64,000 nt of DNA, taken from positions 124,001 to 188,000 of IMG/VR virus record IMGVR_UViG_3300047472_000309; one strand, written 5' to 3'. The notes beneath the pieces were generated by a model, which was given only the letters and a program-made list of their open reading frames with translations, did no database searches and was not told the origin of the DNA. This document shows positions 14,703-23,324 of the stretch, in pieces (within the stretch, counting starts at the first letter, position 1; each line of letters starts with the position of its first letter). Made by a program: the position numbers and the translations under genes.

Positions 14703-14787
14703 TGGTAGAGAGGGTGCGATTTGAACGCACGAAGGCAGAGCCACCGGATTTACAGTCCGGCCCTTTTAACCACTCAGGCACCTCTCT
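14703..14787 (-). tRNA. tRNA-Tyr(GTA)
   Basis: AGAGAGG acceptor, D loop with GG, CCGGA-CTGTAAA-TCCGG anticodon arm, long variable arm, GTTCAAATC T loop, ACCA end. Confidence 0.95.
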
Positions 14788-20604: not shown

Positions 20605-21582
20605 TTAATGCTGCTGGTGGGTACCTTCGACTTCGCGTGCAATGCGCGCTCGCGTACGACGTTGCAAGGCATCGATCGCCGCGTTGATGTGATCCAGCGC
20701 TTCCTGGTTTTCGTCACAGGCGAACTTGCCGTCCTGGAAACCTTGCAGACGATGACCGCACACGGCGAGCAACGATTCGAGCGTCACGCCGTTCTGACCG
20801 ACCTCCGGCACCACACCGTTCTGGAACAGCACGTGCAGATACATGCGCTGACCTGCCCAGTGCTCGCCTGCTGACGCGTTGCTTTCCGTGTCGAAGCCGG
20901 AGAGCTGGTAGCTGTGGTTCGCACCGCTGATTTCGTTGGCGCCATCGCCGACCACCACGACCAATTGCGTATCGGCGCCTTCGACGAGATGCCGAGTAAT
21001 CACAGCGCCGCGTTGACGACCCAGCGCGCGTGCTTCGGCTGCTTCTTCCGTGGCCGGATCACCTTGACGATAATTGGCTTCCGCGTCCGTTTCGTACGCG
21101 GCCGTGACGATCACGTCTTCGAGCGGCACGTCTTGATGAAAGCCCTTGCTACCCGTACGCATACGACGAATTTCGTCGATCACTTCTTGACCGGCCACGA
21201 CTTGGCCGAACACGCAGTAGCCCCAGCCTTGTGGCGTGGCCGACGTATGGTTCAGGAACTCGTTGTCGCGCACGTTGATAAAGAACTGCGCGCTCGCCGA
21301 ATGCGGATCGTTGGTGCGTGCCATCGCGATCGAATACGCGATGTTCTTCAGACCGTTGTCCGCTTCGTTGCGAATCGGCGCGTCCACCGTCTTTTGCTTC
21401 ATGCCGGGTTCGAAACCGCCGCCCTGGACCATGAAGCCATCGATCACGCGATGGAAGATCGTGTTGGTGTACTGACCCTTGTGCACGTAAGCGAGGAAAT
21501 TTGCGACAGTCTTGGGGGCGCGCTCATCGTCGAGCTCGACGAGGAAGTTACCCTTGTTGGTTTCGAATAGGACGTGTTTCAT
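20605..21582 (-). CDS. ppiB: cyclophilin-type PPIase fused to a Tad1-like anti-Thoeris/CBASS sponge domain
   Basis: aa 1-163: [40 protein letters not shown]; C-terminus: GANHSY...FQNG...[36 protein letters not shown]...[14 protein letters not shown], matching the Tad1 pattern. Confidence 0.85.
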
Positions 21583-21626: not shown

Positions 21627-22385
21627 TTAAACCGGGTGATACTCGGGCGAAGTCCGATAGCGCGAGGCGAGCGTGTCAGCTGCAACAGCCTGCAGGTTTT
21701 CCTGCGAGACATACTTGGGTGCACGCAATTCGTTCACGCGATCTGCGTCCAAATCGTAACCGACCAGTCCCACCTGTTCCAGCGCGATCCGGGTCAGGTC
21801 CTGGTGGATCTGTTTACGAATCGCTTCTTCTTGTAGCGAAGGCGCATCGGGAAACGTAAAGAGTGCCTCGATGTGCGACGTGTAAAAGAAGGTGTCGGCG
21901 AGTTCGAGGTTGATACTGCCGCCGATCTTGGCTTCCAGCGTGATCTTGATCCCAGCAGATGTAAACGGGTCAAGCACGTTCAGGATCTTCCCATGCACAT
22001 CGCGCGTGTAGCTATCGATGGTCGTCGAGAACGTCACGCCGCCTTCAAGCTCAACCGTGCGGTAATTACTGCGCGTGTACTTGAGCGGCGCATTGACTTC
22101 TGCGCGGATGTACTGATCGCCGACTTTCACGTAGACGTTTTCCAACAGCGCCTTGTGACTGATAGCGTCCGTCACACCCAACGGCGATGTCTCCAGCAAA
22201 CTTTCTGTTTGGCCCACGCCGAGAATCGAGAACTGTTGGCCGAACCGATACGGCGCCGTCGACAACGAGTCGTTGTCGATTTGAACGATGTGTTGCAATT
22301 CTCCCACCAAAAGTCGCTCGACTTCCGGCCGATACAACGGAACAATCCGCACCGCGCGGAACCGTTTAAAATGTTGCGCTTCCAT
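21627..22385 (-). CDS. truncated paralog of phiKZ-like major capsid protein (putative)
   Basis: IVPLYR, TAPYRFGQQFSILGVGQTESLLET...TDAI, GSINLELADT, VGYDLDADRVN resemble, from memory, the central part of Chimalliviridae major capsid proteins. Confidence 0.5.
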   Translation of the reverse strand: MEAQHFKRFRAVRIVPLYRPEVERLLVGELQHIVQIDNDSLSTAPYRFGQQFSILGVGQTESLLETSPLGVTDAISHKALLENVYVKVGDQYIRAEVNAPLKYTRSNYRTVELEGGVTFSTTIDSYTRDVHGKILNVLDPFTSAGIKITLEAKIGGSINLELADTFFYTSHIEALFTFPDAPSLQEEAIRKQIHQDLTRIALEQVGLVGYDLDADRVNELRAPKYVSQENLQAVAADTLASRYRTSPEYHPV

Positions 22386-22426
22386 TTACTGTCCTTCTTC
22401 TTGGTTTTAGTGACGCACTCCACAGA

Positions 22427-22901
22427 TCGCTCTTTGACACTTCTCTGTCTTACCGTCCTTCTTTCGATTAAAGCGGTAGTCCTCAACAGAGTCGTCGACA
22501 CGTGAGGACGTGTCGTTTGGACCAAAGAACTTTCTGCAGGCTGCGTCCCTTACTTAGTCATCGACTTATCGTTGGCTTGCGAGTCCAACCTTACGTCGCC
22601 TTTTCGTTTCAGGGTACAACTTGCCTTAACTCCGGTAGCACCGTAAGTCTTAGCCGTACGATTTGATTCAACGTATCAACTTGGCGGTATCTCGCTGATG
22701 TGAAGGCGCCACACGGGCGACACCTCACCTCCTAGTAGGATCGTGAACCTACTGCTCTGAGGGGGAGTGAGAGCTTCCCCCTTTCGCGGGCGTTACACCC
22801 ACGAATTACCAATCGTCCCTTGAGAAGGGTGTCTTAACAGATGGACGATTGATAACCGTTGCCGACTTGCACGGCTCATCAGAGAGCTTACTACAGAGCG
22901 A
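22427..22901 (-). ncRNA. candidate large structured ncRNA (~475 nt)
   Basis: ends pair (TCGCTCT/AGAGCGA); many internal stems with minus-strand G-U pairs; no credible ORF. Confidence 0.6.
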
Positions 22902-23207
22902 CTACGCAACCCGGAAAATGGGATTGTCTGCGTCACGCATGCGCTTCAGAAAATCGCGATGACCGTGACGCTTGAGTTGACCTTCCAAGAGGTCAGCCGC
23001 TTCAAAGCACTCGATCATCTTGCTTTCAATGACCGTTGCCACCGAGCCCTTGCACTTCTCATCGGACTCCAACGACGTGCGCAGCTGATACGCTTCAGAG
23101 CGCGTCGTTTCAATCGCAATCCACAGTGCTTCTGAATAAGCACGTGAATATTCGATCGGTTTAAAGTTGTTGTCGTTCACGATTATCCTGTTTGATCTGA
23201 ACAGCAT
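22902..23207 (-). CDS. hypothetical protein
   Basis: 101 aa ORF. Confidence 0.6.
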   Translation of the reverse strand: MLFRSNRIIVNDNNFKPIEYSRAYSEALWIAIETTRSEAYQLRTSLESDEKCKGSVATVIESKMIECFEAADLLEGQLKRHGHRDFLKRMRDADNPIFRVA

Positions 23208-23324
23208 GACTCTTCCAGATTATGCCGCACCTCAGTAAGTTTTCCTATTCTATTGTTTTCTTTAATAAATCACCATTCTTACGGCATAAAGGCAGGACCG
23301 TAGCCCCGCCTTTATCAGAGGCGC

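What the first reader, a model, noticed from the sequence alone, without database searches (positions are those of the whole stretch)
22427..22901. ~475-nt end-paired, highly structured intergenic RNA candidate
Seen: it fills the gap between two genes, and its termini are complementary (TCGCTCT 22427-22433 / AGAGCGA 22895-22901). Internal stems include 22806-22818/22843-22855 (13 bp), 22783-22790/22798-22805, 22760-22767/22775-22782, CGACACGT/ACGTGTCG, AGTAGG/CCTACT and GTTGG/CCAAC. Mismatches read as G-U on the minus strand and linkers are A-rich there. Inference: a large ornate phage ncRNA (size class of ROOL/GOLLD-like RNAs, family not recognised) or a complex leader for the capsid-paralog/PPIase-Tad1 operon.
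Basis: partly seen in the sequence, partly recalled or inferred. Interest (0 to 1): 0.6.

Follow-up and report, generated by a model that had tools for sequence, protein, structure and literature searches.

The report
Hammerhead-headed structured RNA of jumbo phages
The gap holds a real, conserved, about 480-nt phage RNA whose first third has every core feature of a hammerhead self-cleaving ribozyme in an unusual five-way form, apparently cutting free a large structured RNA that is found in soil RNA libraries.

Summary
It folds far better than shuffles (z -4.9, against -1.4 for the plus strand). It is more conserved than both flanking genes and shows abundant compensatory changes across 15 homologues from jumbo-phage contigs.

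New result: the 5' domain (22754-22887) has the full hammerhead type I core and topology.
- Order: stem I, CUGAUGA, stem II, GAA, A15.1-U16.1 stem III, H17 (C, A or U, never G), stem I.
- One or two extra hairpins sit between stem II and G12, which probably explains why Rfam models miss it.
- The core is invariant in 15 sequences, and stems I, II and III covary between lineages.
- Predicted cleavage is between 22759 and 22758.

Two metatranscriptomes hold contigs only downstream of that site (22411-22743) and none on the flanking genes.

The released ~350-nt RNA has conserved CAAGUUGU and GCAGCC...GGRRUGC motifs and a strongly covarying 3' arm. It runs into the next gene here. In a distant lineage it follows tRNA genes and ends at a terminator. 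Its function is unknown. Self-cleavage is inferred, not shown.

The parts
22883..22887 (-). Hammerhead stem I, 5' strand (GCUCU). It starts 1-15 nt after the stop codon of the upstream ORF in all FLC9-like homologues.
   Evidence: It pairs with 22754-22758. It covaries between lineages: GCUCU/AGAGC, GCUGU/ACAGC, GCGGA/UCCGC, ACCC/GGGU.
22876..22882 (-). Hammerhead core strand C3-A9 (CUGAUGA).
   Evidence: Invariant in 15 of 15 homologues. Left unpaired in the MFE folds of five lineages.
22861..22875 (-). Stem II hairpin GCCG-UGCAAGU-CGGC (G10.1-C11.1 closing pair). The loop fits the T-loop pattern U-N-C-R-A.
   Evidence: It covaries to GUGG/CCAC in L057. Loop variants are UUCGAGU and UUCAAGU. 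The T-loop reading is inference.
22807..22854 (-). Hairpin B: optional insertion between C11.1 and G12, a 12-bp stem plus a conserved apical ACACCCUUCUCAAG.
   Evidence: 7 of 12 pairs changed on both sides. Absent in L055 and replaced by a GGC-GAAA-GCC hairpin in L057.
22786..22803 (-). Hairpin C (GGGUGNAANGCCC type): the insertion hairpin present in every member, directly 5' of G12.
22783..22785 (-). Hammerhead core G12 A13 A14.
   Evidence: Invariant.
22760..22782 (-). Stem III hairpin, A15.1 (22782) to U16.1 (22760).
   Evidence: One G-C to A-U double change inside the clade. Entirely different stems occur in L056, L057, L058 and L059.
22758..22759 (-). H17 (C at 22759) and N1.1 (A at 22758): the predicted self-cleavage site lies between them.
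   Evidence: H17 is C, A or U and never G in the 15 homologues. Cleavage itself is inferred.
22754..22758 (-). Stem I, 3' strand (AGAGC).
22734..22753 (-). Hairpin E with an invariant loop (GGUUCACGAUCC). It would be the first structure of the 3' cleavage product.
   Evidence: Two pairs changed on both sides.
22666..22733 (-). Variable hairpins F and G. Holds an SD-like AGGAGGUGA and a 15-codon mini-ORF that FLC9 does not keep.
   Evidence: This is the most variable part of the element.
22547..22664 (-). Middle domain, with the universally conserved CAAGUUGU at 22616-22623 and hairpin H.
22412..22547 (-). 3' arm: long helix with a three-way junction. Its base GCAGCC...GGAGUGC is invariant in all lineages that have the downstream RNA.
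   Evidence: 23 of 41 pairs changed on both sides in 7 sequences. Model R1 finds L049, L050, L053 and L054 at E 1e-13 to 4e-31.
22386..22411 (-). A-rich unpaired linker with the SD GAAGGA (22392-22397) of the downstream ORF (ATG at 22385).
   Evidence: It is not sequestered in the consensus fold.
22891..22901 (-). 11-nt imperfect tandem duplication found only in this window.
   Evidence: The global MFE pairs it with the cleavage-site strand.
22902..23207 (-). Upstream ORF: conserved 92-101 aa helical-hairpin protein of unknown function. Its stop codon abuts the ribozyme.
21627..22385 (-). Downstream ORF: 252-aa partial paralogue of the phiKZ-type major capsid protein, hypervariable among relatives.

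Best explanation
The element is a phage RNA module transcribed on the minus strand together with the upstream ORF. It has two parts.

1. Positions 22754-22887 form a type I hammerhead ribozyme variant. It has a canonical core and stems I-III, with one or two extra hairpins (B and C) inserted between C11.1 and G12, which makes a five-way junction. It most likely self-cleaves between C22759 and A22758. This is inferred from the motif, not shown.

2. Cleavage would release a ~350-nt highly structured RNA (22408-22758) with a 5'-OH end. That RNA accumulates as a stable species.

The hammerhead lets a cassette without a promoter of its own get a defined 5' end from any upstream transcript: an ORF here, tRNA genes in a distant lineage. 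In this phage the released RNA continues into the mRNA for the capsid paralogue and PPIase-Tad1. In the L056, L058 and L059 lineage it stops at a terminator. I therefore judge that the structured part has a function of its own, as a stable ncRNA or RNP scaffold in an accessory, counter-defence gene neighbourhood. That function is not identified.
For: Real structured RNA:
- Folding z is -4.94 on the minus strand against -1.39 on the plus strand.
- Of 143 pairs, 97.5% of cells are canonical, with 12 double and 13 G-U-compatible single changes in 5 sequences.
- 23 of 41 pairs in the 3' arm changed on both sides.
- In the 5' domain, 0 of 500 shuffles reach the observed covariation, and slid controls collapse.

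Conservation above the flanks:
- The RNA is 82% identical to FLC9. The flanking proteins are 38.6% and 57.9% identical.
- Sliding identity peaks at 0.92 inside the element.

Hammerhead:
- The core CUGAUGA / GAA / A15.1-U16.1 is invariant, H17 is C, A or U, and G10.1-C11.1 and N1.1-N2.1 are paired. These are the criteria listed in PMC3088659.
- Stems I, II and III covary between five lineages.
- MFE folds of five independent members give the hammerhead topology.
- A hammerhead descriptor hits the 310-kb genome once, at this locus. Thirty dinucleotide shuffles of the genome give a mean of 0.067 hits.
- Model R2, built from 5 close sequences, finds L056, L058, L059 and L055 at E 4e-5 to 0.017.

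Expression and processing:
- Two metatranscriptomes from different studies hold contigs only at 22411-22743 (depth 12-36). They hold none on the hammerhead domain or the flanking phage genes.

Cassette behaviour:
- Neighbours differ between lineages: ORF stop codon, tRNA-Asn, different downstream genes. A terminator sits at L059:4437-4472.
Against: - No Rfam hammerhead model matches any member, even at E<=10.
- I know of no described natural hammerhead with a 19-76 nt insertion between C11.1 and G12, and it might disturb the core.
- Thermodynamic folds extend hairpin C so that G12 pairs with a C. One substitution in L050 (U-G to U-A) supports that extension.
- Within the FLC9-like clade, stems I and II never vary, so their covariation rests on four other lineages.
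- L055 has G-C at 15.1-16.1.
- Contigs cannot show RNA ends, and absence from contigs is weak evidence. No raw reads of an infection were available.
- Nothing here identifies what the 3' product does. No terminator separates it from the next gene in this phage.
Confidence: 0.55

Rival explanations
1. Purely structural, non-catalytic RNA. The whole ~480 nt is one ornate ncRNA or 5' leader, and the hammerhead-like junction is a structural five-way junction or an inactivated relic that no longer cleaves.
For: - Rfam hammerhead models are silent.
- The insertion next to G12 and the alternative C-G12 pair could disable the core.
- The element runs straight into the RBS of the next gene with no terminator.
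- One RNA contig (X23, record 14) maps to the stretch over only 96 of its 193 nt, at the 3' end of the arm. Its unmapped half may continue into the next gene.
Against: - All 13 core positions are invariant over lineages whose stems and insertions have diverged completely, and H17 avoids G. This is hard to explain without selection for catalysis.
- RNA contigs cover only the 3' side of the predicted site, although the 5' domain is the most stable and most conserved part.
Confidence: 0.22
2. After hammerhead cleavage the structured RNA acts only in cis. It is a 5'-OH, compactly folded leader that protects and tunes the mRNA of the variable capsid paralogue and the PPIase-Tad1 gene.
For: - It is contiguous with the downstream ORF and the SD is left free.
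- In DNA relatives X4 and X5 and in L050 and L053, the downstream gene is swapped or fused while the RNA, the RBS and the first ~15 codons stay.
Against: Homologous RNAs of L056, L058 and L059 end in a terminator-like hairpin before the next gene and follow tRNA genes. The conserved domains are therefore kept without a downstream cistron.
Confidence: 0.25
3. Self-splicing intron (group I or II) that splits a capsid-like gene into the 101-aa and 252-aa ORFs.
For: The downstream ORF matches only positions 146-365 of the 635-position PhiKZ_MCP profile, and the gap is highly structured.
Against: - There is no intron model match at E<=10.
- The true MCP (744 aa) lies elsewhere, and a second paralogue covers the same profile part within one ORF.
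- The upstream ORF has no similarity to that paralogue.
- Both ORFs have their own stop or start codon and RBS, and no frame joins them.
- The flanking coding sequence is far less conserved than the RNA.
- Upstream and downstream genes differ between lineages.
Confidence: 0.02
4. Unannotated protein-coding sequence or a DNA-level element (origin, packaging site).
For: One frame stays open through the near-invariant 3' arm in five sequences.
Against: - Single-base indels between homologues break any frame.
- Substitutions are compensatory in helices, and G-U wobble changes fit one strand only.
- Folding excess is strand-specific.
- The RNA is found in metatranscriptomes without its flanks.
Confidence: 0.03

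Closest known systems
Type I hammerhead ribozymes (Rfam RF00163), including phage intergenic examples such as Bcep176, PaP3 and halovirus HF1/HF2 HHphage (PMC3088659)
   Same: - Same strand order: stem I, CUGAUGA, stem II, GAA, stem III, H17, stem I.
- Same 13 core nucleotides, with paired positions next to the core.
- Same setting between genes of a phage polycistronic transcript. For HHphage, the mapped 5' end of an mRNA lies at the ribozyme site.
   Different: - A conserved hairpin (plus an optional second one), 19-76 nt in all, sits between C11.1 and G12 and makes a four- or five-way junction.
- The sequence of stem II and its T-loop-like loop is almost fixed.
- Stem I is only 4-5 bp.
- No Rfam model detects it.
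- It is fused to a 350-600 nt conserved structured RNA.
Non-circularly permuted hammerheads (types SGC, CSG, GCS; PMC10085705)
   Same: They show that natural hammerheads tolerate unexpected connectivity outside an unchanged core, and that sequence models miss such forms.
   Different: Here the order of the core strands is the classical one. The novelty is an inserted hairpin, not a permutation.
ROOL and GOLLD large ornate RNAs (PMC12286853, PMC5737381)
   Same: - Several hundred nucleotides, many helices, phage-borne, function unknown.
- In one lineage (L058, L059) it sits next to tRNA genes.
   Different: - No sequence or structure match (Rfam, E<=10).
- Found in jumbo phages of Burkholderia-like soil hosts.
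- Carries a hammerhead at its 5' end.
- Oligomerisation was not tested.
HDV-like ribozymes that free the 5' end of R2 retrotransposon RNA from an rRNA co-transcript (from my own knowledge, not checked here)
   Same: A self-cleaving ribozyme gives a promoter-less passenger RNA its 5' end out of a host transcript.
   Different: Different ribozyme class, different kingdom, and the released RNA there is an mRNA.

Membership tests
Hammerhead ribozyme | Core nucleotides C3 U4 G5 A6 N7 G8 A9, G12 A13 A14, A15.1, U16.1 and H17 not G (criteria of PMC3088659). | tested here: met
   All are present in the window and invariant in 14 of 15 homologues. L055 has G-C at 15.1-16.1. H17 is C, A or U.
Hammerhead ribozyme | No mispair next to the core (10.1-11.1, 1.1-2.1, 15.1-16.1). 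| tested here: met
   G-C, A-U and A-U in the window.
Hammerhead ribozyme | Three helices I, II and III supported by covariation. | tested here: met
   - Stem I has four different complementary versions.
- Stem II is GCCG/CGGC or GUGG/CCAC.
- Stem III differs in every lineage.
- Inside the FLC9-like clade only stem III varies.
Hammerhead ribozyme | Three-way junction: stem II joined directly to G12. | tested here: not met
   19-76 nt (hairpin C, with or without hairpin B) lie between C11.1 and G12 in every member.
Hammerhead ribozyme | Match to the curated covariance models (RF00163, RF00008, RF02275-7). | tested here: not met
   No match at E<=10 on the window, L055 or L056.
Hammerhead ribozyme | Site-specific self-cleavage 3' of H17, giving 2',3'-cyclic phosphate and 5'-OH ends. 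| not testable with these tools
   Only indirect: RNA contigs lie solely 3' of the site.
ROOL / GOLLD / OLE / HEARO large RNAs | Match to the family covariance model. | tested here: not met
   No Rfam match at the gathering threshold or at E<=10.
Group I / II intron | Intron model match, and exons that join into one conserved reading frame. | tested here: not met
   The flanks are independent ORFs and vary between lineages.
Riboswitch / translational leader | Alternative structure that sequesters the SD or forms a terminator. | tested here: inconclusive
   - The SD is unpaired in the MFE and in the 4-sequence consensus.
- A UCCU-to-SD pairing proposed by one consensus fold competes with hairpin E, which is supported by covariation.
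- No terminator is present.

The most novel reading that the evidence does not exclude
This is a new architectural class of hammerhead: a four- or five-way junction with an obligatory extra hairpin between stem II and G12 and a T-loop-like stem II. It serves as the built-in 5'-end maker of a mobile, promoter-less, 350-600 nt ornate ncRNA cassette of jumbo phages. The released RNA acts in trans, for example as a decoy or scaffold in counter-defence, or as a self-assembling RNA like ROOL or GOLLD, rather than as a leader.
Probability: 0.3. Interest if true: 0.85.

Novelty: new variant of a known kind. Interest (0 to 1): 0.7.

Why it matters
- It would add a natural hammerhead architecture that current models cannot find, which suggests more are hidden in phage genomes.
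- It would be the first ribozyme and the first large conserved ncRNA family tied to phiKZ-like jumbo phages in the searched literature. Two full-text searches found none.
- It gives a concrete case of a ribozyme acting as a portable 5'-end generator for a large structured RNA that is abundant enough to appear in soil metatranscriptomes.
- FLC9 and Burkholderia glumae are cultivable, so cleavage, RNA stability and the phenotype of a deletion can be tested directly.

Tried and rejected
rejected, because the 11-nt 5' arm is unique to the window.
- **Rfam:** six runs, on the window at the gathering threshold and on the window, L055 and L056 at E<=10, gave only a tRNA elsewhere and chance miRNA-like rows. 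ARAGORN found no tRNA or tmRNA in the gap.
- **Intron or split capsid gene:** rejected.
- **More copies in the genome:** none. Models R1 and R2 found nothing in RP12, FLC1-1B, LucasX or RTH11.
- **Metagenome pattern scans:** no hit, or only 19-nt chance hits.
- **Genome-contig scan:** 16 hits. Eleven lie in one conserved protein gene, which looks RuBisCO-like from memory. None resembles the RNA outside the pattern, so there is no sign of a host origin.
- **The search for related loci with the 252-aa protein:** nothing.
- **First hammerhead model:** a 2-bp stem II closing three hairpins. I replaced it with the model in which stem II is the hairpin directly after CUGAUGA, once L055 and L057 showed that hairpin to be conserved and covarying.
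- **Anti-SD pairing of hairpin E's 3' arm:** judged a chance UCCU/AGGA match, against the covariation that supports hairpin E.
- **Upstream 101-aa protein:** no Pfam, PHROG or PDB sequence match. The Atlas rows scored below 0.8. The AlphaFold model (pLDDT 78) is a helical hairpin with no Foldseek match at E<=0.001.
- **Literature:** no paper linking jumbo phages with hammerheads or with this RNA.
- **Promoter and terminator scan of the locus:** nothing on the minus strand within the element.

Full report
**Setting.** The window is bases 124001-188000 of a 310,654-bp IMG/VR phage record with terminal repeats. Its major capsid protein is of the phiKZ type. That protein is 90.7% identical to the one in Burkholderia glumae jumbo phage FLC9, and the next relatives (Ralstonia RP12/RP31) stand at 46%. 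The finding lies between two minus-strand ORFs, 22902-23207 (101 aa, no family) and 21627-22385 (252 aa). The 252-aa ORF is a partial paralogue of the capsid protein (PF25620 positions 146-365). The true capsid gene and a second paralogue lie elsewhere in the genome. The next gene, 20605-21582, is a cyclophilin fused to a Tad1-like domain (PDB Tad1 chains at E 1e-8).

**Observation.**
- The minus strand of 22386-22901 folds at -185.9 kcal/mol, z -4.94, and no shuffle of 100 does as well. The plus strand gives z -1.39.
- The terminal pairing exists in the letters, but its 5' arm (22891-22901) is an 11-nt imperfect tandem duplication that every relative lacks. Its 3' arm belongs to a covarying helix of the 3' arm.
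- The conserved element is about 22408-22887.

**Homologues.**
- BLAST found the element in FLC9, between gp133 and gp132, at 82% identity.
- Pattern scans of IMG/VR gave three close relatives at 92-97%.
- Searching with the upstream protein gave six proteins. Their contigs supplied five more divergent copies, L049, L050/L051, L052, L053 and L054, at 71-85% identity or only partly alignable.
- Degenerate scans built on the invariant 5' motif then found distant members in other large phage contigs: L055, L056, L057, L058 and L059.
- The element is single-copy in its own genome.
- Covariance models did not find it in RP12, FLC1-1B, LucasX or RTH11.
- Metagenome and bacterial-genome pattern scans gave only chance hits.

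**It is a selected RNA.**
- Against FLC9 the RNA is 82% identical, with 100-nt windows reaching 92%. The flanking proteins are 38.6% and 57.9% identical, and flanking DNA is about 50%.
- On five sequences, a curated structure of 143 pairs has 97.5% canonical cells, 12 pairs changed on both sides and 13 one-sided changes that stay paired. Most of those pass through G-U, which works on the minus strand only.
- Unpaired columns vary twice as often as paired ones.
- With the divergent homologues, 23 of 41 pairs of the 3' arm and 7 of 12 pairs of hairpin B changed on both sides.
- In the 5' domain no shuffle of 500 reaches the observed covariation, and sliding the partners drops pairing from 96% to about 40%.
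- Single-base indels exclude a coding frame.

**The 5' domain is a hammerhead-type motif.** In RNA sense the order is:
- GCUCU (22887-22883);
- CUGAUGA (22882-22876);
- hairpin GCCG-UGCAAGU-CGGC (22875-22861);
- hairpin B (22854-22807) and hairpin C (22803-22786);
- GAA (22785-22783);
- a hairpin that opens with A and closes with U (22782-22760);
- one nucleotide, C22759;
- AGAGC (22758-22754), which pairs with the first GCUCU.

This is the strand order of a type I hammerhead. It meets the published acceptance criteria: the core C3 U4 G5 A6 N7 G8 A9 G12 A13 A14 A15.1 U16.1 H17, with no mispair next to the core (PMC3088659).

Evidence across the 15 homologues:
- The core is invariant, and position 17 is C, A or U but never G.
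- Stem I appears as GCUCU/AGAGC, GCUGU/ACAGC, GCGGA/UCCGC and ACCC/GGGU.
- Stem II appears as GCCG/CGGC and GUGG/CCAC.
- Stem III is different in each lineage and carries a 100-nt insertion in L056, L058 and L059.
- MFE folds of five members from different lineages, made independently, all give this topology. For the compact L057 copy the fold holds 43% of the ensemble.
- A descriptor that asks only for stem I, CUGANGA, GAAA, stem III and H17 hits the 310-kb genome once, at this locus. Thirty dinucleotide shuffles of the whole genome give 0.067 hits on average.
- The model built from the five closest sequences finds L056, L058, L059 and L055 at E 4e-5 to 0.017.

**How it departs from known hammerheads.**
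- Every member has a hairpin of the form GGGUGNAANGCCC (hairpin C) between C11.1 and G12. Most also have another hairpin (B), giving 19-76 nt in all.
- The junction therefore has four or five arms rather than three.
- This is probably why no Rfam hammerhead model scores it, even at E<=10 on short stretches.
- The stem II loop (UGCAAGU, UUCGAGU, UUCAAGU) fits the T-loop pattern. That would explain its near invariance if hairpin C or another loop docks there. This point is inference.

Caveats:
- Thermodynamic folds extend hairpin C by a pair that takes G12, and one substitution in L050 supports the neighbouring pair.
- L055 has G-C at 15.1-16.1.
- Stems I and II are invariant inside the FLC9-like clade.
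- Cleavage has not been seen.

**Expression.**
- Of 23 public runs that hold part of the stretch, two are metatranscriptomes from different studies.
- Laid on 3.7 kb, they give contigs only inside the element. Run X21 has one 232-nt contig at 22466-22697, depth 36, with 3 differences. Run X23 has contigs at 22411-22506 and 22512-22743.
- Nothing lies on the upstream ORF or the capsid paralogue. The pile at 21195-21513 is cross-mapping of cellular cyclophilin genes, with many loose ends.
- Nothing lies on the hammerhead domain either, although that is the most conserved and most stable part of the element.
- DNA contamination would cover the flanks equally, so the RNA is enriched.
- The pattern fits cleavage at 22759/22758 followed by accumulation of the 3' product. 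Contigs cannot show ends, and their absence is weak evidence.

**The released RNA.**
- It begins with hairpin E, which has an invariant loop, followed by two variable hairpins. Next come a middle domain holding the universally conserved CAAGUUGU, and a 135-nt 3' arm whose base GCAGCC...GGRRUGC is invariant in all lineages that have it.
- In this phage an A-rich linker and a free SD follow directly, and there is no terminator.
- In L056, L058 and L059 the RNA is about 650 nt and ends in a GC-rich hairpin with a U tract. In L058 and L059 it lies downstream of tRNA-Ser and tRNA-Asn genes, directly after tRNA-Asn in L059.
- In L055 and L057 only the ribozyme is clearly present.
- In DNA relatives, and in L050 and L053, the downstream gene is replaced or fused while the RNA stays.
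- The RNA is therefore a module that keeps its identity while its neighbours change. The ribozyme would let it be cut out of whatever transcript it sits in.

**Mechanism, with status of each step.**
- Shown: a conserved, strand-specific, covarying structure; the complete hammerhead core and stems; presence in RNA libraries without the flanks.
- Inferred: self-cleavage at 22759/22758; a 5'-OH on the product that favours stability; possible coupling to termination of the upstream ORF, whose stop codon lies 0-15 nt from stem I.
- Unknown: what the 350-nt RNA does.
- Neighbourhood: the surrounding genes are accessory and look counter-defence-like. They include a Tad1 fusion, a variable capsid-fragment paralogue, and cpYpsA-like and BubE genes in relatives. 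A trans-acting role in the arms race is a reasonable guess and no more than that.

**Verdict.** The finding is real and more interesting than first described. It is a new variant of a known ribozyme class, fused to a new family of large phage RNAs.

Noticed in passing
window 22891-22901 (-): 11-nt imperfect tandem duplication (GUAGUCGCUCU next to GUAGUAAGCUCU) found only in this phage. Its GCUCUG can pair with the cleavage-site strand CAGAGC in place of stem I, as the global MFE does, so it might damp the ribozyme.
   Followed up: partly
window 21627-22385 (-): 252-aa ORF that matches only positions 146-365 of the phiKZ major capsid profile. It is hypervariable: 38.6% aa identity to FLC9, replaced by 628 or 1519 other letters in DNA relatives X4 and X5, and fused with PPIase-Tad1 into one 511-530 aa ORF in L050 and L053. 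The first ~15 codons and the RBS stay conserved. A second paralogue lies at G000:105154-105807.
   Followed up: partly
window 20605-21582 (-): Cyclophilin PPIase fused to a Tad1-like domain: PDB 7uav and 8kbb families at E about 1e-8, phiKZ gp184 (8y6v chain I) at E 1e-16, and PF24729 on homologues. This would be a candidate anti-Thoeris sponge tethered to a prolyl isomerase.
   Followed up: partly
window 22721-22733 (-): Strong SD-like AGGAGGUGAGGUG inside the variable hairpin, followed by a 15-codon GUG-started mini-ORF. Four close relatives keep it in frame, but FLC9 does not.
   Followed up: no
L059:3545-3810 and L059:4437-4472; L058 likewise: In a distant lineage the homologous RNA lies downstream of tRNA-Ser and tRNA-Asn genes (in L059 directly after tRNA-Asn) and ends in an intrinsic-terminator-like hairpin. 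This recalls the tRNA neighbourhood of GOLLD and ROOL.
   Followed up: partly
window about 23261-23282; L048-L052, L056: Relatives carry a 179-182 aa cpYpsA-like gene (PF12694, faint) just upstream of the 92-aa ORF. The window lacks it. Some relatives also have a BubE (PF20137) gene nearby, which suggests a plastic accessory or counter-defence island.
   Followed up: no
window 22902-23207 (-): The upstream ORF is a well-conserved 92-aa core with an invariant EAADLLEGQLKRHGHRDFLKR block. It is predicted to be a helical hairpin with no known relatives. Its stop codon touches the ribozyme in all FLC9-like phages.
   Followed up: partly
window 14703-14787 (-): tRNA-Tyr (GTA), the only Rfam or ARAGORN hit in the 64-kb window.
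   Followed up: no
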